A stretch of DNA of 63,591 bases, filler included, from Octopus bimaculoides (lineage: Eukaryota): the NCBI RefSeq assembly GCF_001194135.2. It is 4 parts of 4 records of this genome, joined end to end, with 100 filler letters (N's around TTAATTAATTAA, not from the genome) between each part and the next. Parts side by side here need not be neighbours in the genome. Positions count along the whole stretch, not along the records: positions 38,644 to 61,256 come from NC_068986.1; 3 more parts are not named here. The stretch is one strand, 5' to 3'. The number at the start of each line of letters is the position of its first letter. Within the stretch, counting starts at the first letter, position 1. This document shows, piece after piece, positions 15,583 through 61,356 of this stretch. The notes beneath the pieces were generated by a model. The model searched no databases and was not told where the DNA came from. It was given only the letters and a program-made list of their open reading frames with translations. Made by a program: the position numbers and the translations under genes.

Positions 15583-15604
15583 TTTCACTACATATATATA
15601 TATA

Positions 15605-38543: not shown

Positions 38544-38643
38544 NNNNNNNNNNNNNNNNNNNNNNNNNNNNNNNNNNNNNNNNNNNNTTAATTAATTAAN
38601 NNNNNNNNNNNNNNNNNNNNNNNNNNNNNNNNNNNNNNNNNNN
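38544..38643. other. Artificial 100-bp linker gap
   Basis: 44 N + TTAATTAATTAA + 44 N. Confidence 0.95.
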
Positions 38644-38691
38644 CACACACACACACACACACACACACTTTCTCATTTTTATATATATAGA
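38644..38691 (-). mobile_element. 5' end of a non-autonomous Helitron-like element
   Basis: Minus strand A|TCTATATATATAAAAATGAGAAAGTGTGTG, the same 5' end as 60928. Confidence 0.7.
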
Positions 38692-38692
38692 T

Positions 38693-40630
38693 ACCTACAA
38701 GACCATCTTGTTACATTTTGAACTTCCTCTTTCACTGACCATGATTCTTTCAAAGAGCATGTTGTTTGGTACTGTACTCTAGAAAGTTGTAGCAGCTCTA
38801 AGTAGTTCCTAAAGGATTGTAGGGGCGGGGTGTGTGTGTGTTCAACATCCTGTTATAGTATCTTGGCTACCAAGATTTTGGAGGTTCCCATAACAATGGA
38901 CATAGATAGGAAGCAGAGAAGACTCCTTTATTCTTGTTGCCAAATCACTATGAAGATTCCTCACATTTGCTGCTCCATCAAAGTATTCTCCATCAATTTT
39001 GTCAACCTTCATCTCCAACTTCCCAGGTACATTTTTGACCAGCTTATTGTGAGTACTTCATTCTGTAGAAGGTGTTGCATATCTTAAGACCAAAGATATA
39101 ATAGAAGTTCCAAAAAGTTGATAATGGAAGCTTTGTCTAAGTTACTGTATGACTTCATTGAAATATGAAGTCATAGGTGCATATGAGTATAGGTGCAGGC
39201 ATAGTTGTTTAGTTAAGAACCTTGCTTCCCAACCATATGGTCTTGCTGTTCAGTTTCACTGCACTGCATCTTGGGTAGCTTCTATAGCCTCAGGCTGATC
39301 AAAGCCTTGCAAGTGGATTTGATGAATGGAAACTGAAAGAAGCCCTGTATGTATGTTGTGTATCCTTGTCTTGTTGTTTGTTTCTGGTCTTCTGTGAAAG
39401 GCATGTCTGCTCATAGGGAGCTATTACTTTGCTTGCTAATAGGTAAAAGTTGGTGACATGAAGGCATCTAGCTGTAGAAAATCTGCCTTAACAAATTGTG
39501 TTGGACTCCTGCAAGCATGGAAAAGTGGATGTTAACATGATCAGTAGCACTTTGGTGATAATTTTCAAGTATTCCTTGTTCCACTCTACTTGTTGTTTTC
39601 ATACAGTAATCAGTTTTTCTAACATGGATTTTATCTTTTTTTTGTTCTCTGTATTTACTTAGTTTCATCACGGTCTACTAAAGATATTTTTCACTTTCTT
39701 TACAAACTGTTTTGTCTTGTTTTAATAATTAAGTATTTACAAAGTGTAAGTACTTTACAAAAACAGCATAAAGCTGGATATTTATTTAGGTAAGCCAAGC
39801 ATAATGTTTAAATCATTAACTTTTGAATTCTCTCAAACTAAACTCCTTATCAAATACCTTTGATGTATCCTGTATTAAGATCAGTTGATTTGGTCTGTTT
39901 CAGTGTTATTGTCTAGTGGAGTTTATGAAGCTAGGGGAGAAACTAAGATTGCATTCATTTCATTTCTCATTTTTGTTATTCAAAATATTTTCAGATTCAG
40001 AAGACCCAGGTTCTGTTGAGATATGAAGTTTTTATGTTACACTGATTGTCACTGGTAACAAAATTGTTCTCGGTGACAACTCAGGAAGTTGTGTGGGTTA
40101 CAGAGATATCACTTTTATCAGTATTTTCTTCAATTCCTTTGACTTCATATGGAGAATAGGGTGCCAACAAGAGTTCTCCATCTGTTGTAATCTTTGGGAA
40201 TGGATTGCAGTTGTCCCCAGGTGTAGCTGCCTGTCAGTACTTCCTTTCAGCTTCCACTATATTACTTCATATGCAGTTTCTGAGGACTCCTTCTCATTAC
40301 CAGAAACAGTTTATTACATTCTCTTGGTATATCAGTTATAACATAGAAAATTGCTAGTATAGAGCTGTTAACCCTACTCCTACCCACCTTCCTCCTTTCT
40401 TAATTGCATTTGGGACTGACTGTAGCAGAGTTTTTATCATTTTCAGTTCCTTCTTTATTTGAAAGGTTTGATAGTGTGTGTTTAAAAGCAAAAGGTACAC
40501 AGTCACTGTTAGGAAAGTCAGTCTGACTGGCAAGAGCAATCCTAGTGTATTCTTTTTTAATCTGAATTTGCTTGCTGCATTCTGCACGTACACTGTATTG
40601 ACAATAAAATCGTTTGTGTTATTTGCCATG
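38693..40630 (-). pseudogene. Decayed hAT transposase (TTF-type zinc finger + DUF4371 type), split by a SINE
   Basis: Ordered minus-strand motifs: RPNQ..REFKS**FKHYAWL (about 39900-39780), EWNKEYLKIITKVL (about 39590-39545), GEYFDGAANV..LATRIKE..IYVHCYGNLQNL (about 38990-38870), YNFLEYSTKQHAL and TRWSCR (38712-38693). The upstream part 39990-40630 is less certain. Confidence 0.8.
39185..39540 (+). mobile_element. Chimeric SINE: family-B head + RTE-type tail
   Basis: CTTCCCAACCATATGG...GGAAACTGAAAGAAGCCC head, then GGCATCTAGCTGTAGAAAA...GCATGGAAAAGTGGATGTTAACATGAT tail. Confidence 0.75.
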
Positions 40631-40786
40631 ATGAGACAAATTTAAGGTTATTTATTAAGAATTTTGATTATTAACTGGCAATTAATTTATCACTGATAAT
40701 TTGTTGGCCTTTTTTTGTTAAATTAAAACTTTTTTCTTACTTTGCCTAAATTTAGGAGGGCAGTTGTGTCTCTTACATGCCCAACT

Positions 40787-40836
<50 letters not shown>

Positions 40837-40854
40837 ATGCCAAAACTGAAACAT

Positions 40855-41850
40855 TGGAGCAAGACCTCAATCCTCTGACCTGTTGGATCCTGTCAAATCA
40901 TAAGTACCAGTCAAATACAGGGTTTGATATAATTGAATGTTCCCCCTACTTCAAATTTCTAACCTTGCCTATGTAAAATTTTGCTATTTGTGTGGTTGTT
41001 TGACAGAGTTGTTAGAACATTGGAAAAAGTGGTTTGTAGTTTTTGTTCTGTCTCTTTACATTCTGAGTTCAAATTTTGCATTCATTGTTTCAGGTTCAGT
41101 AAAATAAAGTATTGATTCAAGTAACCCCCTCCCCCAGATTCGAGGCCTTGTACCTTTGGCAGAAACTATTATTATTATTATTATGAAAGCAGTGACCTTA
41201 GAAAATCATAAGTGCATCTGACAGAATGCTAAGCAACATTTCATCTGTTCTGAGTTCAAATTCTACTGAGGTTGACTTTAACTTTCACCATTTTGGGTTC
41301 AATAAAATAAGTACCGATTGAGCACTGGGGTTGAAGTAATGGACTTACCCACTTTCCTGAAATTTCAGACCTTGTATCTATAGTAGAAAGAATTATTAGG
41401 GTGGCAAGTGAGCAGACTTTACTGTGCTGGACAAAATGCTTAGTAGCATTTCTTCTGACTTTTTATCCTGCATTCAATTGCTGCCAAAGTCAACTTAGCC
41501 TTTCATCCTTTTGGGTTGAGAAAATAAGTTCCAGTCAAATGCTGAGTTCAATGCAACCAATTTCCCCTCCCCACAAAAAATTCCAGGCTTTGTCCTTATA
41601 GATGGAAAGAGTATTATTATTCTTATTATTAAGGCAATGAATTGGCAGAATCATTAGCACATCAGATGAACTGTTTAGCAGCATTTCTTCTTGCTGTTTA
41701 TGTTCTGAGTTCAAATGCTGCAGAGGCTGACTTTGCTTTTCACCTTTTCAGGGTTGATAAAATAAGTACCTATTGAGCACTGGGGTTGATGATTACATCA
41801 AACTTACTCACTCCTCCTAAAAGTGTTGGCCTTGTGCCAAAATTAGCAAA
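40855..41850 (+). repeat. Head-to-tail cluster of about 5 SINE-A copies, CpG-decayed
   Basis: Units start near 40860 (partial), 40985, 41185, 41400 and 41630, separated by (ATT)n-type tails. Confidence 0.8.
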
Positions 41851-42354
41851 AAAAAAAAATATTGGTGAGTTGGCTGACTTGGGGAGTGAAAGGCGGGCAG
41901 AACTTTTATCCGTGATAAAATTTCTTTCAGAAGCCCTGCTCCTTTGTGTCCAGTTGATTGATTTTTGATCAAGTTCAAGGCTACAATAGAGTGGACTCTG
42001 CTAAAGACGGTTAAAGGCCAGGTGGTTGTCTTAAACCTGATGGTGGATTTACATCCATATATTCAAGTATCAATTTATGTATCTCTGTTTTAATTTTTTT
42101 TTGTTTGCTGTTACAGCTGAATGTTTAAATGGGCAGGACATTTTAGTTTTAACTATTGATTTCATTATCATATGACCCATCTACAGCTTAGCACTCTACA
42201 ATGAAATTAGAATGGAACCTGTTGTCAGCCAAGCAACTGAAATAAGAATTAGGTGCCTTGCACAAGTGTATATCAAAGGGGCTGTAGTAAAGTTAGAACT
42301 TTTGGAATTTATCAGTTGCATAGGTCCTTAATGTTCCAGCTACTGTGAGTCATG

Positions 42355-42575
42355 ATATCATTATCATTTAATGTCTATTTTCCATGCTGGCATGGGTTGG
42401 ACGGCGTGACAGGAGTTGATAAGGCCAGGGGCTACACTAGGTTTCATAGTTTGTTTTAGCTTGGTTTCTGCAGCTGAATGCCCTGTCTAACACCAACCAC
42501 TTTACAGAGTGTACTGGGTGCTTTTTTAAGTGTCACCATCACCAGTGCTTTTTGCATGATACTATCACCAGTGCT
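42355..42575 (-). mobile_element. RTE-type 3' end ((GAT)n tail)
   Basis: ATCATTTAATGTCTATTTTCCATGCTGGCATGGGTTGGACGG...CCAACCACTTTACAGAGTGTACTGGGTGC. Confidence 0.75.
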
Positions 42576-43269
42576 TTTTAGAGCAAGAATAAATGAAGTA
42601 AAATAGAGGAGAACATAGCAAGAAATAGGCCAAGATTTTCTCTATTAAATGAAAATAAGATTATCTCCAGTTGAATGCTTTATCAGATTTCTTCATATTA
42701 TAATTATATATTGTTTTGTAAATTACAAAGTACTCTATCTTTTAGTTTGTATAGTGTTGAGGAGAGGTGGAGGTTCCAGTAGGGAGTAGTTAATTGAATC
42801 AACACTTCTATATATTTTATCTATGTAGATGTTAAAATGTTGAGGAATGATATTGAAATATTTATTCTAACAGTTTCTGTCAATGCACAACATTATATAG
42901 TGTGTTTCTCTTTGTACTAGTTGTTTGTGAGTAAACGTTTAGTACAAGGGAGTGTGGTGTTATCTAGTCTAATGTTTTCAGTGGTGTTTTAACTTTTGCG
43001 TCATTTCTTAAAACCAATAATGAATAGCAGGAGAGCTATAAATACCCAATTGAATTTATCTTGCTTACAACAACCGTTTATGCAGCTTAAAATACTCTCA
43101 GAAGTTATTCATGTCTCTTAATTTTTCCAACAGTGTGGAATTTAGCAAAAGGCCTTCTCTAGATCAATGAATGTGAAGTTGTTTTATTTTCACATTCTAG
43201 TTTTACTAGAAATATGATATGTGTTTCTTTGCCCTAGTACAAACCACAAACTGAATTTTATCCTAGCTA

Positions 43270-43500
43270 ACACTATCCTATACTAACTTGAGCAAATGAA
43301 GGAGCTGTTTCATGGCTCTACAATCTATTAGAAATAACCAAATCTTCCTTGTATTGCACTTAGCCATCTTTAAAAGAGAATGGACACACTGGATTACGTA
43401 GTCCTAAATATATTGTTTGAGAAAGAGATGAAATTGTCACGGTTGGAATGTCTTTGATCATAGATTCACTCAGTCAGGGCTGGCCTGAAGCTCAACATCA
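43270..43500 (+). repeat. Unclassified dispersed repeat (family F)
   Basis: TAGAAATA..CCAAATCT and GGTTGGAATGTCTTTGATCATAG motifs recur near 8085, 11150, 25550, 37240, 37590 and 59445. Confidence 0.5.
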
Positions 43501-44675
43501 TCAGCAATTTTATACTAACTTTGATAAAAATCAACTATTTTTGAGACTTGACCCATAAATGCAAAACCCATATAATTACTCGTCTTCTGTTTTTGTATCA
43601 GTGGATAACAGCTTGCACGACTTAATTAACTATGTAAGTCAGTAATTGCTTGATATTTGGAGCTGTCAAAAACCTCTTTTTTTCATGTTCTTCATTGGTT
43701 AACTAACCTCTGATGATTGCACATGGAATAAGACTTCTTTTATTCTTCTCAGTCTTAATTTAACAACCTCTCATAGTTAGCATTTTATACTTCTTTTTTA
43801 ATGCTTCTCTATTATTGGTTTAAGCCTGAGAAAAAGGACTGACCATAGCCTTCACCGATTGACTGTTAATGTTACTGAGCATAAGTGCTCAAATGAGTTC
43901 AGACAAACCCCTGCCTTCCAATTCAGAATATTTTGGGTCTTATGACACAGAGCATTATCCTCGATAGTTAATTTTTAAGCTGTTCATGGTGAACTCCAAT
44001 GGACAGATTCTTGGTTTACTGGATTTCTGAGAGTGACAGGGGACTCTCTGTCAATGGATACAAAATGAATATCTCAAGTGTCTTGGCTCACAGACCATCA
44101 GTTTTCATGTTTCTCATCAAATTTTGTTTTCATCCTTCATGATATGCTTTGGTAAAAGATAGACATATATACATTCAGATGCATGTGTATACACACACAC
44201 TGGACTTCTGCAGTTCCAGTCTTCCAATTTCCATTTAGTGAAATCAAATCTAGGATCATATGGCTGCAAAGCTACTTCTTAATCACATAACAGTGACTGA
44301 TAGAATATTTATATTGAAGACAATACTTTTATTTAGCTAACAGCTCTTCATTAACAACAACTCATTTCCAAATTCCTTAGATTCTCTAAGAATATTAACA
44401 GCCATCATATGCATCTGTATTCTCAATGTTAGAACCTTCCTTTCACTTTATGTATCACCTTATGGTCAATTCTGAGTATTGCCTTAACATCTTGTAATAT
44501 GTTAGGTGCATTAGATGAAGTTTTCATGTCATTCACAGTTGTTTTGTACAAGATAACCAGCTATATGGAGATGCTATTATGGAGACTGATAAGTATTTAA
44601 GCATCATCTTCTTTCAGATTTTTTACTGAGGGGTGGGGGAGTCCTTTTGTCTTTGCAGTATTAGGTTGACAAACT

Positions 44676-44898
44676 AAGGTGGCGAGCTGGCAGAATCATT
44701 AGCATGCTGGGCGAAATATTTAGTGGCATTTTGCCTATCACTACGCTCTTAGTTCAAATTCTGCCGAGGTTGATTTTGTCTCTTGTCCTTTTGGGGTTGA
44801 TAAATTAAGTACCAGTGAAACACTGGGGTTGATGTAATTGACTAGTCTCTTCCTCCTCCCAAATTTCAGACCTTGTGCTTTTAGTAGAAAGGATTATT
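44676..44898 (+). mobile_element. SINE family A, CpG-decayed
   Basis: AAGGTGGCGAGCTGGCAGAATCATTAG...TTTTGGGGTTGATAAATTAAGTACCAG...GGGGTTGATGTAATTGAC. Confidence 0.88.
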
Positions 44899-44949
44899 AA
44901 GTTAACAAATGATCCCTGCTCCTATTACTTCCTTGACAAACTCTATGTA

Positions 44950-46200
44950 CTGTGTCATGGGATTTTTATATGAGATTACAAAAATGGTTGTTGTTTGCCT
45001 TCCTTGTGGCTTTGTTAAAAGACACTATCTTGTTGGTTGTAGTAAATTCCAAGGGAGAATTTTTGTCAGATCATAGAAAAGTTGAGATTCAAATTGCCGA
45101 CCTCTGTCTTGAGAAATCCAACCCGATAAGAGTGCCTGAGTCACAGTTGGTGATGACATATCTGTGATGAGCATGGCTTCCAGCCATCATGAGAAATGGT
45201 CTATGCATGTCAACAAGTACGTATATCCCTGACTCAAGGGCCAGTGTTTTTAAAGGTCTATATGGATATACTGGAAACGAGCGTCGGGATGGGTGAATGT
45301 TCCCAGCGATGCTTTGATATGCCTGTGAACCTTTGCTTTCTAGCAAGGCAGGCAGTTCCTGGTCCATTTGGTGATATCTCGCCTCATGTTGGGCCAGATG
45401 AAACGAGTTGAAATTAGCTTAAAAGTTGTAGTAATACCAGGTGGGGAGATGTTATGTAGCGCAGAAAACACTCAGCGTCTGTGGTTCTTGGGCACAAATG
45501 AACAAGGGCAATTGGTGGAGATATCACAAAGAATCTCAAAAGGTGTCACAGGTAGTTGTTGAATGTCAAAGGGAGAGAACTCTGGTTTGTTATCTGTGTC
45601 TTCTACTCATGGTTGATCTTTAGCCATGGTATCCAAATTGATCTCGGCAGATGAGAATATGGAGTCAATAAACGAGACAAGGCATTAGCAGCGATATTCT
45701 CTTTTCCAGGAACGTGCTGGATATCACTGGTGAATTGGGAAATGAAATCCAAGCAATATGTATCTCAGGGTGAGAATTTGTTGGGCTTGCAAAGCAAAGG
45801 ACAGCGGCTTGTGATTAGTGTAGATCGTGAAATTCCTGCCTTCCAGCATGTGCTGGAAATGTTTGACTGTGAGGAAGATGGCGATCAGTTCACAACTGAA
45901 AGTACTGTAACAGGTTTGGGCTAGTTTGAGCTGTTTTGAAAAGAACGCAAGAGGTTTCCATTTAGAACCACACTGTTGGTGTAACACAGAATCCACATCG
46001 AGGTCCAAAATGTCTATGGACAACAGCAGCAAATGGAAATGCCTTCGGTGAAAATAGGCACAGGTAGTTGAGAAACAGCAGCTATGGAAGGTGAAGCCAT
46101 TGTTACTTGCCGAGTGTGTGAGTCTGGTGAAAGAAATGTTATGATGCTCTGTATTGCCATGTGAGAAATGTCTTGCTTTTCTCCAATGTCGGGTTCACCA
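44950..46200 (-). mobile_element. Ty3/gypsy LTR retrotransposon remnant (PBS, RNase H, integrase)
   Basis: WKPLAFFSKQL...YSTFSCELIAIFLTVKHFQHMLEGRNFTIYTNHKPL (RNase H); ILCDIST..VFSALHNISPPG..RFIWPNMRRDITKWTRNCLPC*KAKVHRH and IHIDL (integrase); RNase H then integrase order. Confidence 0.9.
46188..46200 (-). promoter_or_regulatory. Putative primer-binding site, tRNA-Trp type
   Basis: TGGTGAACCCGAC versus the tRNA-Trp PBS TGGTGACCCCGAC (12/13), located upstream of the pol remnant. Confidence 0.6.
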
Positions 46201-46597
46201 CTTTAGTGAGTATATGAATGTTTTCATTGCTAGTTTGGCAATGTGCTGATTAGATGTGTGGGCTGCATGTAAATGAAGAATAAACACTCACTGAATATAA
46301 TAATTTTTATTTTTATTAGAGATCCATTGCATGATATTATGGCATTCTGGCTTGTACAGTTTAAACAAAAACAGAGTGAGTGAATATATTGTCAGATGAT
46401 ACCTATTGTGAGAGTGGCATCATGACACCATGTGTAGGGTGCTGAAACAAAGAAAGAGAGCTAGCAGTCCTAGCTGTGGGCAGTGAGTGCTCAAGGGAAA
46501 AGGGGAAGAGTCGGGTTGTGTTTCGTGCATGCATCGTGGCTGCCCGCTTTCTCCTTTCTGGGCCATTTATGTTTAGCCCTGATATAATCCAAGCAGG

Positions 46598-46978
46598 AGT
46601 GGAGGCGCAATGGCCCAGTGGTTAGGGCAGCGGACTCGCAGTTGTAGGATCGCGGTTTCAATTCCCAGACCGGACGTTGTGAGTGTCTATTGAGTGAAAA
46701 CACCTAAAGTTCCACAAGGCTCTGGCAGCGGATGGTGGCGAACCCTGCTGTACTCTTTCACCACAACTTTCTCTCACTCTTTCTTCCTGTTTCTGTTGTA
46801 CAAGTATTTCAAAGGGCCAGCCTTGTCACACTCTGTGTCGTGCTGAATCTCCCCGAGAACTACGTTAAGGGTACACGTGTCTGTGGAGTGCTCAGCCATT
46901 TGCACTTTAATTTCATGAGCAGGCTGTTCCGTTGATTGGATCAACTGGAACCCTCGTCGTCGTAACCAACGGAGTGCC
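46598..46978 (+). mobile_element. Intact tRNA-derived SINE, family D (381 bp) with 12-bp TSD
   Basis: A box TGGCCCAGTGGTTAGG, B box GGTTTCAATTCC; AATCCAAGCAGG at 46586-46597 and 46979-46990. Confidence 0.9.
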
Positions 46979-47704
46979 AATCCAAGCAGGTACGATGGGT
47001 AGACTACAATAGCATCACTCTTGTGTGTGTATGTATCCATGCATGAGATTTAGAGATATGAGAAATAGTGCCTGTCTAACATCAAAATACTAAGCATTTA
47101 TTGAATTAATTACATTGAATAACATGACAATATTTTAACGTTTTTATAATGAATTGGCATCATTTACTTTATATTTAATAATTAATCTTTATAATTTTAG
47201 TCTCAGTAAGTATTGCCTAACTTAATAGCATGTCCCTGATACATACATGGTACCAAACTAGATTTGAACTTTGATCCTTTATTTCTAAACTATACCACTA
47301 ACATATGAATCAGTAGCATAGTTGATAAAAATGTTATCTTTCATTTAGAAATAAAGGTTTCTAGTTTTATCTTTAATTTAGAAATAAAGGTTCCTAGTTC
47401 AAATTCAATTAATTAGTAACGATGATTGAAGACCAAACTGATTTAAACATAGTCATCATCTTCATTGTTCATTATCGTTTTACATCTGCTTTCCATGCTG
47501 GCTTGGGTTGGAAGGGTAATTTCTATCTCTTAGGTTGGAGGACAAAAGGTCACTTGTAAGGCTCAATTTTGGGTTGGTTTCATCCTTAAGAAAGTGAGAG
47601 AGTTGAGGTCATGAAGTTGAGAGGAAATAGGTGAAATGTTGGAGATAGGATATAAGATTCTGTGGCATTCCTAATTACACTGGAAGTAATGTATGGTCAA
47701 TCAA

Positions 47705-47930
47705 ATATTAGAAATATTGATTTCAAATTTTGGTACAAGACCAGCAATTTTGGAGGTGGAGATAAGTTGATTACATCGATCCCAGTGTTCAACTGGCACT
47801 TATTTTATTGACCCGCAAAAGGATGAAAGGAAAAGTTGACTTTGTCTGAATTTGAATTCAGAACGTAAAGCTAAATGAAATGCTGGTAAGCATTTTGCCT
47901 AGTGTGCTAACAATTCTGCCAGCTGTCTGT
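47705..47930 (-). mobile_element. SINE family A, CpG-decayed
   Basis: Reverse complement of the A body: GGATGAAAGGAAAAGTTGACTT...GAATTTGAATTCAGAACG...AATTCTGCCAGCT. Confidence 0.8.
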
Positions 47931-48355
47931 CTTCAAATGTTATAAATATTTTTTTTTTAAATAAAGACAAAAATGGTAAAAAAAATATGAGGAGGTGATG
48001 TGTGTACATCTTATCAAGTAGATGGTCTGGGTAGGTGTGTGTATGATGGTTGAACACTAATGTGTGATGTGTTTATGTTTTGTCTAGAGATAGTTGTTAA
48101 AAGTTGAAGTATCTTTTGCCTTTGAAAAGGAAACCCAGCCTTTGGAATGTAACTAGGAAGTATTATAAGTTTCCATGGCAGTGTATTAGAGGCCGAAAAC
48201 TGAAGAGTTTATAGGGAGTGGTTGTATATTCTCTATACATACAACCATTTGTAAGAGTACAATTTGAGCTCTCTTGAGAGGAGTTACGTCTGCATTTTAG
48301 TGTTAACTACATTTAGTTATTGAGTGCTGTTCTGGACCGTAGAATACGTTTATCC

Positions 48356-49434
48356 TTTATGTTTTACTTGTTTCAGTCATTAGACTGCTGCCTTGCTGGA
48401 GCATCACCTTGAAAGGTTCAGTCGAACATATTGACTGTAATATTTATTTTTTAAGTCTGGTGCTTATTCCATTGGTCTCTTTTGCTGGACTGATAATGTT
48501 GTGGGGACATAAACAAACCAACACCTGTTCTCAAGCAGTGGTGGGATGAATACAAATACACACACACAAACCTCCATTCTCAATCCCCACCTCGATTCTT
48601 ATTGCACCCACCCCACCGTAAAGTTTTTCATCCACATCTCATTCCCTAACATTCATCACTTCATCTGTGGTGGTATTATTTATCTACCATAATCACCTGA
48701 GAGTAGAATAGGCACATACTACATCACCCCTTTCATTACGGTCCTTTTTCTTCCCCCACCTCACCCCCCCAGAATCACTTTCATTCCAACTTGTCTTCTT
48801 CCAGTTGTACCCTCTCTTTCTTACTACACTCCAGCCCTATCACCCCTTTTATCTTCTATCACTCCCAATGCCTCTCCATATCTAAGATAAACTAACGCCA
48901 CACTGAGCCACTCCTAAATCTCTCACTGTCACTTACTATAGTCATCTCTGTCCCATCTCTAATCATCTCTCCTCATATTCTTATGAAAACTCCCCCCTGT
49001 CCTTCCCCTGCCCACTTACCCAGTCTAATCCTATCTTTCTCTCTCTAAGTCTCTCTTTCACTTTCTCCATCTCCAACTGGGGTATCCTTGTCTCTTTTAC
49101 TGCAAGACACCTATCTCTTTCCCTCTGTTATTCTTTTATCCTCTCAACAACTGGCACGAGGCTACCTCCCTCAATACTACTCCCCCTCACTTGAGTGGAC
49201 TTTGTTTTGCAAGTTGCTTAGTGACCCTGCTGGTACTTATACCATGAAAAGAAAAAACACTCACTATAAAAATGGTTGACACTATCAAGGGCGTTCAACT
49301 TGTCCAAATCATATCAAAAGAGACAATAAGAGCTTGGTGCAGTCCTCTGACTTGCCAGTTCTTGTCAAACCATTCAACCCATGCCAGCATGGAAAACAGA
49401 TGTTAAATGATGATGGTGATATGTGTATGTATGT

Positions 49435-49470
<36 letters not shown>

Positions 49471-49630
49471 TGTGCTTCTACACAATTTTGATCTACAAAT
49501 TCACTCGCAAGGCAAGCGTTGGTTGGCTTGGGGCTTTTGTAGAAGACATTTGTCTAAGCTACCATACAGTAGAACTGGACCTGAAATCATGTGGTTGCAA
49601 GGTGAGCTTCTTGACCACTTAGACATACCT
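48356..49630. mobile_element. Nested insertion: SINE-B (minus; tail 48356-48575, head about 49440-49630) interrupted by an RTE 3' UTR (plus, about 48580-49420)
   Basis: The two B halves flank a C-rich segment ending CAACCCATGCCAGCATGGAAAACAGATGTTAAATGATGATG. Confidence 0.72.
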
Positions 49631-49659
49631 AACACATGTGGATAGCTTTATAATATATC

Positions 49660-50060
49660 ACCATCAGCATTTAATGTCTATCTTCCATGCTTGTATGGGT
49701 TAGATGGTTAAACGGGAATTGGTAAGCTGGAGAGCTGCACCAGGCTCTAGTCGTCTGTTTTGGCTTGGTTTCTATGGCTGGAAGCCCTTCCTAATGCCAA
49801 CCACTTTATAGAGTGTACTGGGTGTCATTGGTATGGGTGCTTTACATGTGCCATTTGCATAGGAGCTCCTTATGCTCCACTGGCATGGGAGTCCTTTACA
49901 CACCACTGGCTTGGGAGCCCATTGTGTGTTGTTGGTATGTTGGTACAATTGCTCACTATGTGCCACCTGCATGGGTACCCTCTTTGCACAGCCGGCATGG
50001 GTGCCTTTTATGTGGGCTGGCTATGCAATAGGATGGTGGCACAGAAAGGTGTCACTGTGC
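49660..50060 (-). mobile_element. RTE-type 3' end with degenerate internal tandem units
   Basis: CATTTAATGTCTATCTTCCATGCTTGTATGGGTTAGA...CCCTTCCTAATGCCAACCACTTTATAGAGTGTACTGGGTG. Confidence 0.65.
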
Positions 50061-50445
50061 AACGTGCATAGCTGCATGATGAAATGGCTATGTGTCATAG
50101 TATTAACTGTGCACTGACTGTGCACTAAAGAAAATTGTCGCTTTATCTGGTTTTTTTTTTTATCAGTAGTAAATTCTTAGCCACAAAGTTCACAAACATT
50201 TAGATAAATGTGATAAATGTTATCTATGGATTGTTGGTAAAACTGGGGCACAACTATTTTATTTTGCTTTTTTCTTAAAGTAATTTCATATGTGTTTCTG
50301 GTTATAAAAATTGTGATTCTAACTTGGATCAGTATTGTATAAAGTAATCAGGTGAAGAATGTTTGGTGAATAGGAGTAGACAAAGCTGGATGCTTTTTGC
50401 ACTTGTAAAGGCAGAAAACAATGACGAAGTAGAAAATTGTTATTA

Positions 50446-51731
50446 TTAGGTCATCAAGTATGAAATTTGTAGAAAAAAAAAAGGTTGCTAATGTTTTATA
50501 AATACAAGGAATCTTTTTATTCATCAAAGTATGCGCCTATATTGTCAATACACTTTTGCCATTTCAGCGGTACCTTATCCAGCTCAGAACTGTAAAAGCA
50601 TGGCAATCTAGAGTCAATAAAATCTCGGAAGGCCTGTTTTACAGCATCGTCAGAATTAAGTTTTTTTCTATCAAAAAGTTATCCAAGTTCTAGAAGAAGT
50701 GGCTGATAGTCAGTGGGGACAAAATCAGGTGAGTATGGTGGATGATGGAGAACTTCCAACTCCAACTCCTGTAGTTTTGCCAATGTCATTTTTGCGACGT
50801 GTGGTCTGGTGTTGTCTTGCAATAAAACAGGAGTGGATGTGTTGACTAATCTAGGCTGTTTTTTGTAAGTTTCTGCATCATTTGGTCCAGTTGGCTGCAG
50901 TATACTTTGGCTGTGATTAATGAGTCAGGTTTAATGAAATCATAATGGATCACACCTGCACTAGACCACCAAACACACACCATCAGTTTCTTTTGATGAA
51001 TTTTGCTTTTTGGACTGTGTTTTGGTGGCTTATCTTTGTCCAACCATTGTGCTGAATGTTTACAGTTGTGTGTATTGGATCCATTTCTCATCACATGTTA
51101 CAATTCGATTCAAAAATGATTCACTTTTGTGATGAGGAAGTAGCATAATGCAGGCTTCCAAACGTTACTGTTTCTGATTGACATTGAGTTCATGTGGAAC
51201 CCACTTATCCAACTTTTTCACTTTACCGATTTGAACTAGGTGAGTCAATATTGTTTGCTAACACCAAACAACAACAATAATTCACAGGCACTTTGAGATG
51301 GATCTGACTTGACAGTGGCTTTCAGTTTGTCATTATTCACCCTTGTTTCTGGTTGACTGCATTGCTCATTCGTAAGGTCAAAGTTGCCAGAATGAAATTT
51401 TGCAAACCAATTTGATACTGTCTGCTGTGTATAACATTAGAATGAAATACTCCATTGATATTCCAAGCTATCTGTGATGCTGTATTTCCAAGAAAGAACT
51501 CATATTCAAAACTGTACGAATTTCTGACTTATCCATCTCTAAACTAAAATAGCAAAAAAAAAAAAATGATTTATAAATACTTATAAAGTGCAAAATGAGT
51601 TTGAATAAAGAAATAGATGTGTCAGCTTTCTAGCAAAAAATAAAGATTGTCAAAATATAATAATGGCACAAAATGAGCAGCTGTCAAATTTACCATATAC
51701 CTTACTACAAATTTCATACTTGACAACCTAA
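50446..51731 (-). mobile_element. mariner DD34D (cecropia/Hsmar1-like), full-length defective (1286 bp)
   Basis: TIRs TA-TTAGGTCATCAAGTATGAAATTTGTAG and reverse complement TA-TTAGGTTGTCAAGTATGAAATTTGTAG; ATG at 51536 (MDKSEIRTV..), WLDKDKPPKH..HQKKLMVCVWWS, QDNTRPH-x-HPPYSPDFVPTDY (D-34-D). Confidence 0.93.
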
Positions 51732-52014
51732 TAGAAGACTAGAATTTATTTTGACTAATCACCTTCTTTAATAGGTCTAGAACTGATGCTGTGAGTGACA
51801 TTTAAACCAACTGATGTTTGCTTGCATCAGTCTTCAATATTTATCTTTTATGCTGTATCTCTGGACTGATGTGCTCATGAAGTACTCTTAACTCATATAC
51901 AGTACACATCCATTTTCTCTTCTTACTCTTTTCCTTCTCTTGTTCCACATTTAATAAACCTATTATTATTCTCAATTAAATGCTAAATTCAATAACAGGA
52001 ACTATTACTGCCAG

Positions 52015-52485
52015 GGCTACAGCAAATATTCTGCTCAATACCACAGATTTGCTTGTCAGTTGTTTAACCATAACTAGTTGAGCATGCCCCTTGGTGGCTG
52101 ACAATATGTGCATCTCTGATGACGAGCAGAAGTTGTGGGGAAGCATCATAGTCATGTGTTGAGGAATTCTTTGGGGTGTGAATAATTCACCTACGGAGAC
52201 ATGGGTGTTTCATTCATCATCCTTAAACAACCTGTATTCAGGGACCCTTTGAATGGGATGAGCTACTTGACCTGAAGAAAACTCTAACTGGGCCCCACCT
52301 GCAAGGTCATGCGCTGCAAGGTCACCATGTTGCGCACATATGGTTGTGGTGGATGTGCCTGACGTACCCTTATCAGATAGGTAGTCACGATGGGTATATT
52401 GGGCTTCGTATATTTGTACCCCAGTGTCACTTTGATGGCATGCACTGTTCTCTCACTCAATAATAATAATAATAATAATAATCCT
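52015..52485 (+). repeat. LINE-3'-UTR-like interspersed repeat ending in (AAT)n
   Basis: GC-richer 470-bp segment ending CTCTCACTCAATAATAATAAT. Clade not determined. Confidence 0.5.
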
Positions 52486-52665
52486 TTCTACTATAGGTAC
52501 AAGGCCTAGATTTTTATGGGGAGGGGGACAGTTAATCACATCGCTCCCAGGATGAAAGGCAAAGTCAATCTAGGCAGAATTTGAACTCAGCAGATTGCAG
52601 CAGATGAAATACTGCTAAGCATTTCACTTGGCATGCTAATGATTCTGCCAACTCACTGCCTTAAT
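52486..52665 (-). mobile_element. SINE family A, CpG-decayed
   Basis: GGATGAAAGGCAAAGTCAATC...GAATTTGAACTCAG...GATTCTGCCAACTCACTGCCTT; shares the (AAT)n tract with the preceding repeat. Confidence 0.8.
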
Positions 52666-55222: not shown

Positions 55223-55253
<31 letters not shown>

Positions 55254-55479
55254 GCTGTGGCCATCACACTCTGCTTTGAGCATTTCTGATCTGATTTATA
55301 GCTTTCTGTTAACATTTTAGATGAAAGGGTGACCTCTATGACTATATTTCAGATTTTTAGGGTCTTCAAAATTGGTGGAAGGAAGTAGTGAAGTTATATT
55401 ATACTAGAGATCTGGCCTAAATTATTACCAGAGAGTGGCCTTTGCTCAAGGCATCCAAGGATTGGGTGGTAATGTTTAA

Positions 55480-55697
55480 TCCTTTAGCATTGAAACCAGC
55501 CATATCTGATCCAAATATTCTACCTGTTTTATGTTCAAACTGGCCAGATGTAGCCTTTCACACCTACCCTACAATGTTATTCTTAAAGTAAACACTAATA
55601 TCATTGAAACACTGAAACTATGAGATAATACATGATTAATTCAAAACTGTGAATAAATAAGCATTACATTTGATAGAGTAATCTGAATGCTAAAGGG
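55480..55697. mobile_element. piggyBac-type MITE (218 bp)
   Basis: TTAA at 55476-79 and 55698-701; 12-bp TIR (T/C)CCTTTAGCATT ... AATGCTAAAGGG. Confidence 0.8.
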
Positions 55698-56144
55698 TTA
55701 ACCAAGTGGTGGATAAAATCTACAATTGAAGAACAAGTGAAGTTCTTCTTGTAGGATACCATATAGTTTCTATCTGTCAACTTTCACTTGTCAAGATATG
55801 ACCATTCCATCTTTTCTGAAATATTCAAGATTAATATAATTTAAGGGTGTTTTGTTTTTGTAATCATCTTGTATCCATTCTGTTAGGTGTATGAAAAGTG
55901 TGTTTATTGAATGGATTGGATTGGATCCATGTGACTAGAAAATGAGAATAAGTACATTAGGAGGATGATGGATCATGATCTGCTATAACTGGGAGCTAAA
56001 TCTCTTTCAGATTTTTGTGTCTTTGAATGTTCTGGCTAAAGTAATCATGCATATAATTTATTAAAAAATGGGTTGGTCATAGCAGGAATACTGAATGTAG
56101 TCAGTGAAATATGCTTGCATGTGGTTTATGTGAGTGTGTGTGTG

Positions 56145-56590
56145 ATCATCATCATCATCATCATCATCATCGTTTAACATCCGCTTTCCATGCTAGCATG
56201 GGTTGGACGATTTGACTGAGGACTGGTGAAACCAGATGGCTACACCAGGCTCCAATTTGATTTGGCAGAGTTTCTACAGCTGGACGCCAACCACTCAGAG
56301 AGTGCAGTGGGTGCTTTTATGTGCCACTAGCACGAAGGCCAGTCAGGCGGTACTGGCAATGGCCACGCTCAAAATGGTGCATTTTATGTGCCACCCGCAC
56401 AAGAGCCAGTCCAGCGGCACTGGCAACGATCTCGCTCGAAAATCCTTACACATGTCACGGGCACAAGTGCCAGAAAGGCGACGCTGGGCACAGGTGCTAT
56501 CCCTATTTCGCTTGCCCCAATAAGTCTTCGCATGCTGAGTTTCGTGTCCAATGAAGGAGATGACGTTGGCATGGGTGCCAGTCGTTGGGA
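56145..56590 (-). mobile_element. Young RTE-type 3' end with (GAT)n tail and ~60-bp internal repeats
   Basis: (CAT)n CGTTTAACATCCGCTTTCCATGCTAGCATGGGTTGGACG...; retains many CpGs. Confidence 0.85.
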
Positions 56591-56900
56591 CACAGTCATG
56601 ACATCAGTAATTGAGAAGCTCACTTTACAATCTTGAGGTTCTTAGTTCAATATCACTGTGTAGCATGTTGGCTAAATGTCTTTACTATAATCTGATTGAC
56701 CTAAGTCTTTTGAGTGAATTTTAGTAAATAAGAATTGTGTACAAGCCCACCGGGTGGATTGTACCTGTAGTTCAGAGATCCAGCCTTGACTTACTGCCAT
56801 GTTGATTTTACTTGAAAATTATGTTAAGGGTACATGTCTGGAATACTTAATTACCTTGAATCCTAAGTAAGTCATCTTGTTGGTTCAACAAGACCTTCAT
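56590..56900 (+). mobile_element. Old chimeric SINE: family-B head + family-D-like tail
   Basis: GTTCTTAGTTCAATATCACTGTGTAGCATGTTGG..GAGTGAATTTTAGTA head; GTACCTGTAGTTCAGAGATCCAGCCTTG..TATGTTAAGGGTACATGTCTGG resembles 46795-46885. Confidence 0.55.
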
Positions 56901-56959
56901 GTGTCAATATTAATAGGAAAGTCCATCTATACATGACCTTGTGTATGTGTTTGTATCAG

Positions 56960-57600
56960 CCAGCCTGAGACAAAATTCTGTACAGACTGTTGGAGTTTCA
57001 TGATGCAAATGACTTGATCTGCAACACTAACTTGAAGATACCAGCCATTTACCTGATCACCTATCAGTCCTGTGGAAGTACATGCTAGATTGACTGTCCT
57101 TTCTGGAAAATGGGTTATACATTCTTCACCAGTGAAAGATTTTGCATTCACAGCTGTCTATCTTGAAATAAGCTAGTGGTTTGTGACTTCAGACTTACAG
57201 CTAGAGGGACTCAGACACACAAACCAGTTTGGAAAAAGATATAGTAGCTTAAAGATCTATGAAACTGCCAGAAATTTAGAGAAGTTTTAACTGAGGCAAC
57301 TGATAAAAAGAAGGAAGAAATAGAAACATAACACAGGGGGCAACTGGAAGTACTTGTAGGACAACCTATTGAGAGTTGGACTAAATCTATGGCTAATGCA
57401 AGGTTCTGGCCAGCCTAAGGTTGATGTGGTTGTGGAACAATGAAGTGGAAAGAGCCATAAATGGGAGCAGCAGAGACTTTGATTATGTAGCTAGAAGAAA
57501 ATATATGTGACAAGCTTATTTAGCAAATGGAGAAGCAGAAAGTAAGAGATTTGCCAGTGTTCTACAATATGAGGACCAGAGACATGAGGTGTTTGTGCAA
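56960..57600 (+). pseudogene. Old RTE LINE fragment (end of endonuclease and linker)
   Basis: RLLEFHDANDLICNTN..YLITYQS; downstream WN.EVERAI and RFASV..EDQRHEVF. Confidence 0.65.
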
Positions 57601-58389
57601 CCACATAAACTCCATTATTAACTCAAAAATATATTGTGTATGTAGTTGGTTGTTCACCATATTTTAGAGTGCATGAAACCTACTTTTCAATGTAGGCTAT
57701 TTTTATGTGAGTACCTGTGTCATCTAGGTCATTGCCACTCTCTGCAAAATGTCTTTATAAAAACATATATTGCATGTCATTGTATTATACAGAGTGTTAT
57801 GTCTGAAATGTGTTACAGAAATATATAATTGCATATCATTGTGTAAAAGAAGTATCATTGTTACTTACTGGAATGTTTTGTTACATAACATAGTTACATG
57901 TGAGGCTTACATAATCAGTATTCAACCAATGAACTCATTTCATTTTGTTGAATGTCAGTCACTCAGTATAGTGTATTTGTGAATTGCTTATATGTGTCTC
58001 TGTTTTGAATTATGCATATTTGTTATTACGGTGTGTCTCCTAGTTGAAGAATTGTTACATATGTGTGTTGTAAGAGGCGAATGTTGTTATAACAAATACT
58101 GATTTTCCATTCTTTGTTGTTGTTACTGTATTTATTCTGTTTGTTGTGAATTTGTTGTTTCATTTGATGGCGTGTTAATGATATCTTTAGGTCAGCCATC
58201 TCAATAAATTTTGATGAGGACATATTTAGTCTACATTTTGGCAACATTTTTGTTAAAAAGTCTAGTGAAATAATAAAGAAATCTTTTGTTTTAAATAATG
58301 GCAATGGGTTGAAAGAAAGAAAATTCAAACAATTCTAGTAATGATGATTTTTTTTTCATTATCGTGAAAAATTGTCAACTACATAGGCA

Positions 58390-58600
58390 CTGTCATGGCT
58401 GTCTGATAAGAAGTTTGCTTCTCAACCACATGGTTCTGAGTTCAGTCACACTGTGTGGCACTTTGGTTAAGTGCCTTCTGCTATAGTGCTTTGGGCTAAC
58501 CAAAGCCTTGTGAGTGACAGAAACTGAAAGAAGCCTGTTGTGTGTATATTTGTCTCACCCATTGCAGCATGGAAGGCGGATGTTAAACGATGATGATGAG
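58390..58600 (+). mobile_element. Chimeric SINE: family-B head + short RTE tail
   Basis: CTTCTCAACCACATGGTTCTGAGTTCAGTC...GAAACTGAAAGAAGCC, then GCAGCATGGAAGGCGGATGTTAAACGATGATGATG. Confidence 0.75.
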
Positions 58601-58677
58601 GATGGTATATATATGTTATAATATATATATTATAATATAAATATTATAATATATATATTGTATTATATATATTATAG

Positions 58678-59330
58678 GCGCTGAATAACATCTCTCCTCC
58701 CCAAGCCTCACCCCACATTCCTTTCCCAGTTTTCAGAGTTGGTACTGTCAATGTAGGCACACTGAAAGGTAGGTCTAGTGAGGCTGTGGAGATGCTTGAA
58801 AGGAGACGTGTTGATGTATGCTGCATACAAGAGGTAAGATGGAGAGGAGCTTTAGCTAGGGTCCTCACAGGCAAGGTACATAGGTATAAAATCTTCTGGC
58901 AAAGTAACATGAATGGAGTAGAGGGTGCAGGCATACTCCTTGCAGAGAAATGGGTGGATAAGGTCATAGAGGTTGTCAGGGTATGCGATAGAGTGTTTAA
59001 GCTCAGGCTAGTCCTGCAGAACAGCACAGCTACAATTATCTCTGGCTACGCCCCACAAGCGGGCCTACCAAATGATCAGAAGGACCATTTTTATGATACC
59101 CGTCTACAGGCTACCTCAAAGACGAGTGGCAATGACCCCATCTTTGCAGTTGGAAATTTTAATGGGCATGTTGGATGGAAATCCGGTATCTTCACTGGTG
59201 TACATGGGGGCCATGGTATTGCTTCCTGGAACGATGAAGGAACTAGGCTACTGGAGTTCTGTGATGCATGTAACCTTTTAATCTGCAACATTAACTTCAG
59301 GAAGCAAGACAGCCACCTGATAACCTATTG
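58678..59330 (+). pseudogene. RTE-clade LINE apurinic-like endonuclease domain, 3'-truncated
   Basis: Stop-free frame of about 217 codons: RVGTVNVGTL, VDVCCIQEVRW, ISGYAPQ, VGNFNGHVG (GDFN to GNFN), RLLEFCD, SHLITY, then non-RTE sequence. Confidence 0.9.
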
Positions 59331-60927
59331 TCATCTAGGTCATTGCAACTGTTCGGAAAATATTGTTACGTAAACATATATTGCATGTCATTGTTCTGTC
59401 CAGTGTGTGCTTTATGTTTTTAAATCAGTAGGATGTGATATGAAGGAGATTTGGCTGCTATATCTGGCATGATTGAGAAACAATGTAGATGTTTCCTTGT
59501 CTTTGGTTGAAATAGTTGACACATTTACCCACCTTGCTCTCTCCACATTCAACTGTTTATCCCTTGTAGGGAATGGACAGACATTGGCAGCAGCCTGCTT
59601 CATCTCAATACCAAGTTCAGTCTAGTACTTATTTTACTGATTCCTATGTATCAAACTAAATGAAGAGACAAAAGGATCCAACACACACACACACACACAC
59701 ACTGAGCTCTTGCACAGTTTGTCAACCAAGTTCCACTGTCAAAGCATTGCATAATCAAGGCTGTTGTAGAAAATATTTATTCAAAGTTCCATGCATTGCA
59801 ATTGAACTCAGAGCCACATGGTTGGGCAGTGAATTTCTTAACCATACTATCGTTGAGTTATAACATTAGCTGAAGGTTACAAATAATAGATTAAATTAAG
59901 TATTAACTAGTGCACTGGAGAGATTTGAACTTGGAATGTAAAGATATGTAACTAAATACTGAAGGCAAAGGCAGTGAATTGGCAATTGATAGAGAAAGTG
60001 AAATAGCCTAAGTAAATAGCTTTGGATGTTACGCTTTTACTCTTTTGCGTGTTCCAGCTCAAAGGCTGTGGTCATGCTGGGGCTCTACCATTATTCAATT
60101 TGTTCTTTTTTTTCTTTTGTTATTAGGTTTAAATGCTTATTCATATTGTCAGATTAGACAGATACATACATCTACAGAAAGGAAAATCAATATGATAGAT
60201 AGATAGGTAGGTTGGTAAGTCTACAGATATACCCATAGATATACAGATAAATTGATATGTCATTAGATATACAGATAGATAAATAGTTGAATTGAAATGG
60301 AAAGAAATGAAAATCTTGATTGTTACTGATAAGTATGGTGGAAAAGTGGACATAAAAAAAAATGATGATGATATATCTATATATATGAGTAACGATTGTG
60401 AAATAAAATGAACGGCTAATAAAATTAAAGATAAATGAAATTGAAAATTTAGTGTCTTATCATAATTGAATATTCTCATTCTCTGCAGATAAGTGGGTTT
60501 TTTGTTAGTTATTCAGTTAATTGCAGGGTGAAACTGATAATGTTAAAATGCTGATGAAATATTGTGATAAAGCATAGAACTTTAAACAGCTTGAAATATC
60601 ATTACAGTAGTTCAGCTTGTTGGAAATCTTTTTTTCTCACATCAAAGTATATATAGGTTTGTGAAAATTTTACTTTTCTTCCACATGATTAGTGAGTAAT
60701 ATAACATTAATGTGGATATGTTGTTATTCCCAGAGAGAGAGAGAGTTGTGTGTGTGTATGATGTAGATAATACTTTAGTTAAGTGTTGCATTTTGTTTAT
60801 TTTGAAATGGATAAAAATTATATATAATCTGGAATCCAAAAAAAAAAAAAATTCAGTTTATTGCAGTTTAAACAGTTTAAATTTAAATTTCATTTGCAGT
60901 TAACCACCATATCTATTTCTGTGTTAA

Positions 60928-60949
60928 TCTATATATATAAAAATGAGAA

Positions 60950-60996
<47 letters not shown>

Positions 60997-61256
60997 GTGA
61001 ATCCCTAAAACTCGAGAACTACGCAACCAATTTCATTCAAATTTTACACATGCCTTATTTAGGGTTCCAGTTGTGTTTTAGTAAAAAAAAATTTTTAACT
61101 TCTTGCAGAGTTCGAGCCCACGGCAACATAATATCTCCTCCACTATTTAAGTATTACGTGTCAAAAGTGAAACAAAAACACTCAGGTCAAATACTTTCAC
61201 TTTAAAAATGAAACTATTCCACTAACTGAAACAATCACATTTCGATACTGTAATGA
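60928..61256 (+). mobile_element. Non-autonomous Helitron/DINE-1-like element, 5' part, cut by a gap
   Basis: A|TCTATATATATAAAAATGAGAAT + (GTCT)n + AACTACGCAACCAATTTCATTCAAATTT, the typical layout of such elements. Confidence 0.75.
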
Positions 61257-61356
61257 NNNNNNNNNNNNNNNNNNNNNNNNNNNNNNNNNNNNNNNNNNNN
61301 TTAATTAATTAANNNNNNNNNNNNNNNNNNNNNNNNNNNNNNNNNNNNNNNNNNNN
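61257..61356. other. Artificial 100-bp linker gap
   Basis: 44 N + TTAATTAATTAA + 44 N. Confidence 0.95.

What the first reader, a model, noticed from the sequence alone, without database searches (positions are those of the whole stretch)
38644..61256. 22.6-kb CpG-depleted domain: same SINE family CpG-intact outside, CG>TG/CA inside
Seen: the SINE-A copy at 22204-22417 has 15 CpGs in 214 bp and the 3559 copy has 14, whereas the copy at about 41630-41850 has none; 41401-42000 contains only 2 CpGs. Diagnostic sites change as GTCGA>GTTGA, TTCGGG>TTTGGG/TTCAGG and ATCG>ATCA. Heavily diverged copies outside (near 12150 and 23020) still keep CpGs, so age alone does not explain it. Known: invertebrate methylation is mosaic and centred on gene bodies. 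Inference: this block is a long-term germline-methylated region, probably a large intron of an unseen gene. Both edges coincide with linker gaps of unknown size, so the sharp boundary may be an assembly join.
Basis: partly seen in the sequence, partly recalled or inferred. Interest (0 to 1): 0.7.

Follow-up and report, generated by a model that had tools for sequence, protein, structure and literature searches.

The report
CpG-poor stretch of octopus genome
This 22.6-kb piece of an octopus genome has lost about three quarters of its CpG sites by the mutation pattern that DNA methylation leaves, but four of seven comparison stretches from octopus genomes show the same SINE decay and six are CpG-depleted, so it is an ordinary feature and not a special domain.

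Summary
The piece (38644-61256) has 175 CpGs against about 762 expected (o/e 0.23), with reciprocal TpG and CpA excess (1.34, 1.36). The repeat copy at 41638-41846 has no CpG.

The piece comes from an octopod genome. It is a patchwork of SINE-like repeats and dead transposons, with no detectable host exon.

At matched non-CpG divergence (9-25%), copies in the piece keep 8 of 110 consensus CpGs. Copies in one CpG-intact O. vulgaris region keep 46 of 80 (p = 2e-14). Non-CpG substitution rates are the same in both. So age does not explain the loss, and the loss is CpG-specific (about 7-fold), as expected from 5-methylcytosine deamination in the germ line.

The depleted state is common. Six of seven comparison loci are mostly depleted (o/e 0.23-0.48), and their old SINE copies keep 16 of 193 CpGs, indistinguishable from the piece (p = 0.83).

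The "sharp boundaries" are the artificial ends of the piece. "Intron of an unseen gene" is plausible but unproven.

This is known biology: mosaic invertebrate methylation, already described for octopus. Interest is low.

The parts
38644..61256 (.). Whole piece: CpG-depleted sequence (o/e 0.23; TpG 1.34, CpA 1.36). Both ends are artificial, so the true extent is at least 22.6 kb.
40900..41846 (+). Head-to-tail cluster of five SINE-A copies or fragments (40900-40967, 41001-41156, 41192-41387, 41412-41601, 41638-41846). They hold 0-1 CpG each against 17 in the 167-bp consensus core.
44682..44888 (+). SINE-A copy. Non-CpG divergence is 13.6%, and 4 of 17 consensus CpGs are kept (10 TG, 2 CA).
47723..47927 (-). 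SINE-A copy. Non-CpG divergence is 9.8%, and 2 of 17 consensus CpGs are kept.
52487..52656 (-). SINE-A copy. Non-CpG divergence is 16%, and 1 of 16 consensus CpGs is kept.
56136..56587 (+). Second short-repeat family (SINE-B, head TTTCCATGCTAGCATGGGTTGGACG). This copy still carries 20 CpGs and accounts for the richer pocket at 55644-57143. It contains a 67-bp internal tandem duplication at 56310-56443. Other, CpG-poor copies are at 42357-42563(+), 47445-47577(+), 49640-49979(+), 49254-49444(-) and 58548-58612(-).
45028..46194 (-). Remnant of a Ty3/Gypsy-type LTR retrotransposon pol. It has an RNase H domain (45727-46194) and integrase-like ORFs (45028-45418), broken by stops. It lies in the CpG-richer pocket 45144-47643 (o/e 0.36-0.55).
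50440..51750 (-). Degenerate mariner-type DNA transposon. Transposase_1 matches at 50849-51097 and HTH_48 at 51340-51528, with the frames interrupted.
58672..59373 (+). Endonuclease (APE) part of a non-LTR retrotransposon. The best relatives are Octopus proteins named 'craniofacial development protein 2-like' (62-81% identity). This identifies the host lineage.

Best explanation
The piece is a repeat-rich, non-coding stretch of an octopus (Octopus-type) genome. It belongs to that genome's CpG-depleted compartment.

Shown: CpGs in datable repeat copies were lost about 7 times faster than other dinucleotides. The loss was mainly by C>T on one strand or the other (CG>TG or CG>CA). Non-CpG substitution rates are the same as in a CpG-intact octopus region.

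Inferred: the region has been cytosine-methylated in the germ line for a long time, presumably by the DNMT1/DNMT3 system known in octopus. Deamination of 5-methylcytosine then converts CpG to TpG or CpA. Newer transposon insertions bring in fresh CpGs that are still decaying, which gives the two richer pockets.

The state is common in octopus genomes, so the piece is an ordinary sample of it. Whether it lies inside a transcribed gene (an intron) or in methylated DNA outside annotated genes is open. I put the intron reading at roughly 50%.
For: Organism: the APE ORF's best hits are O. bimaculoides, O. sinensis and O. vulgaris proteins. SINE-A and SINE-B copies are shared with loci from all three genomes.

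Depletion: o/e is 0.23, with TpG 1.34 and CpA 1.36. The repeat part has o/e 0.28 and the non-repeat part 0.20.

Matched-age test, using copies at 9-25% non-CpG divergence:
- piece: 8/110 consensus CpGs kept, against 70% expected if neutral, a rate ratio of 7.3
- L007 (O. vulgaris, o/e 0.86): 46/80 kept, a rate ratio of 1.7, Fisher p = 2e-14 against the piece
- L001-L004: 16/193 kept, p = 0.83 against the piece

Specificity, transitions by site class, for piece / L007 / L001-6:
- C/G inside consensus CpGs: 41% / 20% / 44%
- non-CpG C/G: 14% / 16% / 16%
- A/T: 6.5% / 6.5% / 6.6%

Independent decay: at most sites the copies are a mix of TG and CA (37 TG, 35 CA, 5 TA).

Commonness: six of seven comparison loci have o/e 0.23-0.48.

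Literature: O. bimaculoides has mosaic methylation enriched in the bodies of about 14,000 genes, introns included (PMC9476566).
Against: No methylation data were available, so methylation is inferred from its mutational footprint only.

The published somatic methylomes report under 10% of CpGs methylated and low methylation on transposons on average (PMC9476566). The piece's transposon copies nevertheless show methylation-type decay.

The comparison loci are few (7, about 160 kb) and are all anchored on one transposon family that was annotated as genes. Their 6:1 ratio may therefore overstate how common depletion is.

No exon was found, so a gene-body location is not shown.
Confidence: 0.85

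Rival explanations
1. The piece is specifically one long intron, or several introns, of an expressed gene with a methylated body whose exons lie outside the piece.
For: In O. bimaculoides methylated CpGs are strongly enriched in introns and exons of about 14,000-21,000 transcripts (PMC9476566). The + strand has T>A (skew 0.07, 10 of 11 2-kb windows) and G>C (0.05). This is the sign seen on the coding strand of transcribed mammalian DNA.
Against: There is no host exon. Pfam hits on six-frame ORFs of at least 45 aa are all transposon domains. Sixty non-repeat ORFs gave no hit in 5.8 billion proteins.

Equally depleted DNA occurs in loci where no host gene is listed (L001-L004, L006) and upstream of the Staufen gene in L005. 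The one confirmed gene body in the sample (L005 1-8548) shows no strand skew, so skew is not informative here.
Confidence: 0.5
2. The CpG loss is only a matter of age or a general AT-biased mutation: old repeats, no methylation needed.
For: The copies in the piece are old (10-22% non-CpG divergence). The few CpG-intact copies in otherwise depleted loci are young, under 4% divergence.
Against: At the same non-CpG divergence, and with the same non-CpG transition rates, copies in L007 keep 58% of CpGs against 7% in the piece. Neutral expectation for the piece is about 70% retention.
Confidence: 0.03
3. The copies descend from a CpG-poor subfamily of the SINE, so TG/CA was inherited from the master copy and not acquired in place.
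For: Two of the 17 consensus sites (positions 58 and 138) carry the same non-CpG state (CT; AA or AG) in most old copies everywhere. These are subfamily differences.
Against: At the other 15 sites the copies are mixtures of TG and CA, with occasional CG, which requires independent hits after insertion. Dropping the two sites leaves 8/97 against 43/71.
Confidence: 0.03
4. The piece comes from a globally methylated (vertebrate-type) genome, and the contrast the reader saw arose from mixing organisms in the joined window.
For: GC of 37%, CpG o/e of 0.23, TpA of 0.76 and (CA)n microsatellites look vertebrate-like at first sight.
Against: The transposon protein's best relatives are Octopus proteins. 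Both short-repeat families recur in O. bimaculoides, O. sinensis and O. vulgaris loci.
Confidence: 0.02

Closest known systems
Mosaic methylation of invertebrate genomes with CpG-depleted methylated compartments. Examples are Ciona (Simmen 1999; Suzuki 2007, from my own knowledge), oyster CpG o/e classes (PMC2996979) and the octopus methylome (PMC9476566).
   Same: Low CpG o/e with TpG/CpA excess sits next to CpG-intact DNA in the same genome. Repeats take on the state of the compartment they sit in. The same species group is already shown to methylate a subset of gene bodies, introns included.
   Different: Here only the mutational footprint is seen, not 5mC itself. No transcription unit could be tied to the piece. 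In my small sample the depleted state also covers DNA with no listed host gene.
CpG decay of Alu and other SINE copies in mammalian genomes, used as an age clock under global methylation.
   Same: The chemistry and read-out are the same. Consensus CpGs in SINE copies turn into TG/CA several-fold faster than other sites change.
   Different: In mammals this happens almost everywhere. In octopus it depends on location: L007 copies of the same age keep most CpGs.
Vertebrate-type bulk genome composition (CpG o/e about 0.2-0.25).
   Same: The piece's dinucleotide profile is numerically the same.
   Different: The host is a cephalopod whose genome also contains regions with o/e about 0.86 (L007). 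I estimate a genome-wide mean of about 0.5-0.6, from the 80.66 million CpGs counted on both strands in PMC9476566 and from my own recollection of assembly size and GC.

Membership tests
CpG-depleted (historically germ-line-methylated) compartment of a mosaically methylated invertebrate genome | CpG observed/expected far below 1 and below the genome mean | tested here: met
   o/e is 0.23. The seven pooled Octopus loci give 0.49, and L007 gives 0.86.
CpG-depleted (historically germ-line-methylated) compartment of a mosaically methylated invertebrate genome | Reciprocal excess of TpG and CpA | tested here: met
   TpG is 1.34 and CpA 1.36 in the piece. In CpG-intact L007 they are 1.06 and 1.03.
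CpG-depleted (historically germ-line-methylated) compartment of a mosaically methylated invertebrate genome | CpG-specific hypermutability in datable repeats, beyond what age explains, and dependent on location | tested here: met
   The piece keeps 8/110 consensus CpGs against 46/80 in L007 at matched divergence, p = 2e-14. Non-CpG rates are equal.
CpG-depleted (historically germ-line-methylated) compartment of a mosaically methylated invertebrate genome | Host genome has a working CpG methylation system with a mosaic pattern | tested here: met
   The host lineage is Octopus. DNMT1/UHRF1 and a mosaic methylome are reported in PMC9476566. This rests on literature, not on this locus.
CpG-depleted (historically germ-line-methylated) compartment of a mosaically methylated invertebrate genome | 5-methylcytosine actually present on the remaining CpGs in germ cells | not testable with these tools
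   No bisulfite or nanopore data are accessible.
Gene body (intron) of a methylated, expressed gene | Flanking or internal exons of a host gene; the locus lies within an annotated transcription unit | tested here: inconclusive
   Pfam hits are only transposon domains. Sixty non-repeat ORFs have no homologue. The locus could not be placed on an annotated assembly. A purely intronic piece would give the same negative result.
Gene body (intron) of a methylated, expressed gene | Transcription evidence (RNA-seq) or transcription-linked strand asymmetry | tested here: inconclusive
   T>A skew is 0.07 and G>C skew 0.05 on the + strand. The Staufen gene body in L005 shows no skew, so the measure is not validated for octopus.
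Discrete chromatin or methylation domain with defined boundaries | A transition from depleted to intact CpG content within contiguous genomic sequence | tested here: not met
   No such transition exists inside 38644-61256. Both ends are artificial joins, as stated by the scan's program, with N runs at 38600-38643 and 61257-61300.
Vertebrate-type globally methylated genome | Vertebrate origin of the sequence | tested here: not met
   The best protein relatives and the shared SINE families are from Octopus.

The most novel reading that the evidence does not exclude
In octopus the CpG-depleted compartment may cover roughly 40-55% of the genome. This is my rough two-state estimate from the published CpG count and from six of seven sampled loci. 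That would be more than annotated gene bodies, and more than somatic methylomes suggest (under 10% of CpGs methylated, transposons 'unmethylated').

The piece could then be part of a germ-line-specific or formerly methylated domain outside genes, in which transposon copies were methylated for long periods.
Probability: 0.25. Interest if true: 0.45.

Novelty: already known. Interest (0 to 1): 0.15.

Why it matters
As a single locus it matters little. It is a textbook footprint of mosaic methylation in a genome where that pattern is already published.

Its use is methodological. SINE copies act as built-in clocks that separate age from methylation-driven CpG loss. Applied genome-wide, the same test could map long-term germ-line methylation in cephalopods without any bisulfite data. 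It could also show how far that compartment extends beyond annotated genes.

Tried and rejected
- Rfam scan and tRNA scan of the piece gave only microsatellite-driven sub-threshold miRNA matches and no tRNA. ARAGORN also finds no tRNA in the SINE-A consensus, so I make no claim about the repeat's origin.
- Exon hunt, part 1: Pfam on all 178 stop-to-stop ORFs of at least 45 aa found only transposon domains.
- Exon hunt, part 2: a concatenated query of 60 non-repeat ORFs against 5.8 billion proteins gave no hit at E <= 1e-3. A hAT-like ORF that I recognised by eye (38845-39057, minus strand) also found nothing.
- Pinning the locus to an annotated genome failed. The APE ORF has no identical protein, with a best hit of 62% over its full length. 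The Gypsy and mariner ORFs have best hits of only 37-49%, from assorted invertebrates. No DNA search of eukaryotic genomes is available.
- Strand skew as a transcription indicator was rejected, because a known gene body (L005) shows none.
- A full CpG-site analysis of SINE-B was abandoned. Its internal 67-bp repeats and its lack of copies in the CpG-intact locus made a clean consensus and control impossible.
- I tested whether the tandem SINE-A copies arose by local duplication. Neighbours are no more alike (61-73%) than random pairs.
Full report
**What is there**

The window holds real sequence only at 38644-61256, between runs of N. That piece is 22,613 bp with GC 36.8%. It has 175 CpGs where base composition predicts about 762, so o/e is 0.23. 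TpG (1.34) and CpA (1.36) are in excess and TpA is low (0.76).

In 1-kb windows CpG o/e is mostly 0.03-0.30. Two richer pockets stand out: 45144-47643 (0.36-0.55) and 55644-57143 (0.44-0.47).

The interval 41401-42000 has two CpGs, at 41894 and 41911. The repeat copy at 41638-41846 has none.

**What the piece is made of**

About a third of the piece matches interspersed repeats that recur in other octopus loci.

Five lie head to tail at 40900-41846.
- Six copies of a second short repeat, SINE-B.
- A broken Ty3/Gypsy pol remnant on the minus strand at 45028-46194. RNase H scores E = 3.5e-18, and its relatives carry RT, RNase H and integrase.
- A degenerate mariner at 50440-51750, minus strand.
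- The endonuclease part of a non-LTR element at 58672-59373.

The best relatives of that endonuclease ORF are proteins of Octopus bimaculoides, O. sinensis and O. vulgaris, at 62-81% identity. Both short-repeat families recur in loci from all three genomes. The piece is therefore octopod DNA, not vertebrate DNA, despite its vertebrate-like dinucleotide profile.

**Is the CpG loss more than age?**

I fetched seven loci of 20-31 kb around Octopus relatives of the endonuclease. From their CpG-intact SINE-A copies I derived a 167-bp consensus core with 17 CpGs. I aligned every copy to it and scored non-CpG sites and CpG sites separately.

The table covers copies with 9-25% non-CpG divergence.

| Group | Consensus CpGs kept | Neutral expectation | Rate ratio |
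|---|---|---|---|
| Piece (7 copies) | 8/110 (7%) | 70% | 7.3 |
| L007, O. vulgaris (5 copies) | 46/80 (58%) | 72% | 1.7 |
| L001-L004 (12 copies) | 16/193 (8%) | 69% | 6.7 |

In the piece the other CpG sites are 37 TG, 35 CA, 5 TA and 25 other states. The piece differs from L007 at Fisher p = 2e-14, and from L001-L004 at p = 0.83.

Transition frequencies show that the excess is CpG-specific.

| Site class | Piece | L007 | L001-L006 |
|---|---|---|---|
| C/G inside consensus CpGs | 41% | 20% | 44% |
| Non-CpG C/G | 14% | 16% | 16% |
| A/T | 6.5% | 6.5% | 6.6% |

The copies are thus of equal age, and only CpGs behave differently. At most sites different copies carry TG or CA, so the changes happened independently after insertion. 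Only two sites (positions 58 and 138) reflect an older subfamily, and removing them changes nothing.

Age alone and a CpG-poor master copy are both rejected.

**Is it a special domain?**

No. The whole-locus CpG o/e values of the seven comparison loci are 0.39, 0.41, 0.23, 0.29, 0.40, 0.48 and 0.86. Six of the seven are mostly depleted, with CpG-rich patches that coincide with young repeat copies. One example is L002 2372-2535, at 3% divergence with 16 of 17 CpGs intact. Only L007 is uniformly intact (TpG 1.06, CpA 1.03).

The published count of 80,660,576 CpGs on both strands in O. bimaculoides (PMC9476566) implies a genome-wide o/e of about 0.5-0.6. That figure rests on my own recollection of assembly size and GC, so it is rough. 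It is consistent with the pooled 0.49 of my sample, and with something like 40-55% of the genome being in the depleted state.

The sample is small and anchored on one transposon family that was annotated as genes, so it may be biased towards transcribed DNA. Even so, the piece is clearly an ordinary member of a large class.

The "sharp boundaries" are the artificial joins of the scan. There is no transition inside the piece. The two richer pockets coincide with the Gypsy remnant and with a SINE-B copy that still has 20 CpGs. This fits later insertions that are still decaying, but I did not date them.

**Intron of an unseen gene?**

[quoted passage not shown] Methylated CpGs are enriched in the exons and introns of a subset of genes, and the pattern is stable across tissues (PMC9476566). 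A methylated gene body is therefore the first guess. I could not confirm it.

- Pfam on all 178 stop-to-stop ORFs of at least 45 aa found only transposon domains.
- Sixty non-repeat ORFs, concatenated, found no homologue among 5.8 billion proteins.
- The locus could not be placed on an annotated assembly.
- The + strand shows a persistent T>A skew (0.07, in 10 of 11 2-kb windows) and a G>C skew (0.05). The one certain gene body in my sample, Staufen in L005 1-8548, shows none, so I give the skew little weight.
- Depleted DNA also occurs in loci where no host gene is listed, and upstream of Staufen.

I put the intron reading at about one half.

**Mechanism**

Shown: CpG-specific, strand-symmetric C>T loss at about 7 times the background rate, dependent on location.

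Inferred from established knowledge: germ-line maintenance and de novo methylation (DNMT1/UHRF1, DNMT3) over this region, followed by deamination of 5mC to T. Targeting is probably through transcription-coupled chromatin marks, as proposed for gene-body methylation generally. No methylation data were available to me.

**Comparison with what is known, and verdict**

This is the classical picture of a fractionally methylated invertebrate genome, and the octopus methylome is already described. I rate it already known, with low interest.

The only mildly novel angle concerns the size of the depleted compartment. It seems larger than annotated gene bodies and than somatic methylation levels suggest. 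Transposon copies within it did decay as if methylated, whereas the literature stresses unmethylated transposons. That needs a genome-wide test, which I could not run.

Noticed in passing
window 40900-41846; also L002 7691-8526, L003 18725-19310, L007 29651-30442: SINE-A copies repeatedly occur in head-to-tail clusters of 3-5, in the piece and in three other Octopus loci. Neighbours in the piece are no more alike (61-73%) than random pairs. This points to repeated independent insertion next to or into each other's tails, and not to local duplication.
   Followed up: partly
L007 1-31333 (O. vulgaris OX597839.1, 13908697-13940029): A 31-kb region is uniformly CpG-intact (o/e 0.86, TpG and CpA about 1.05, GC 43%). 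Even SINE-A copies at 12-24% divergence keep 41-59% of their CpGs. It is the opposite state to the piece. Why it escaped depletion is unknown.
   Followed up: partly
window 38644-61256, + strand: There is a persistent T>A skew (0.07, positive in 10 of 11 2-kb windows) and a G>C skew (0.05). This is more consistent than in any of the seven comparison loci. It could reflect transcription on the + strand or repeat orientation.
   Followed up: partly
window 48700-49200: A roughly 500-bp pyrimidine-rich (C/T) low-complexity tract on the + strand gives the strongest local GC skew in the piece (-0.37 over 48644-49643).
   Followed up: no
SINE-A consensus positions 58 and 138 (for example window 41412-41601 and 47723-47927): Old copies in all loci share CT at position 58 and AA or AG at position 138, where young CpG-rich copies have CG. 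This marks an older and a younger subfamily of the repeat.
   Followed up: partly
L002 2372-2535 and L007 28262-28426: Young SINE-A copies from O. sinensis and O. vulgaris are 98% identical to each other and keep 16 of 17 CpGs. This suggests recent activity of this repeat in that lineage.
   Followed up: no
window 56310-56443: The SINE-B copy has an internal tandem duplication of a 67-bp unit (2 copies, 81% match). CpG-rich copies in other loci show the same repeated unit in variable number.
   Followed up: partly
window 38845-39057, minus strand: A 71-aa ORF (…YFDGAANVRNLHSDLATRIKESSLLPIYVHCYGNLQNL…) looks by eye like the conserved core of hAT/ZMYM1-type transposases. It found no hit in the concatenated database search.
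   Followed up: partly
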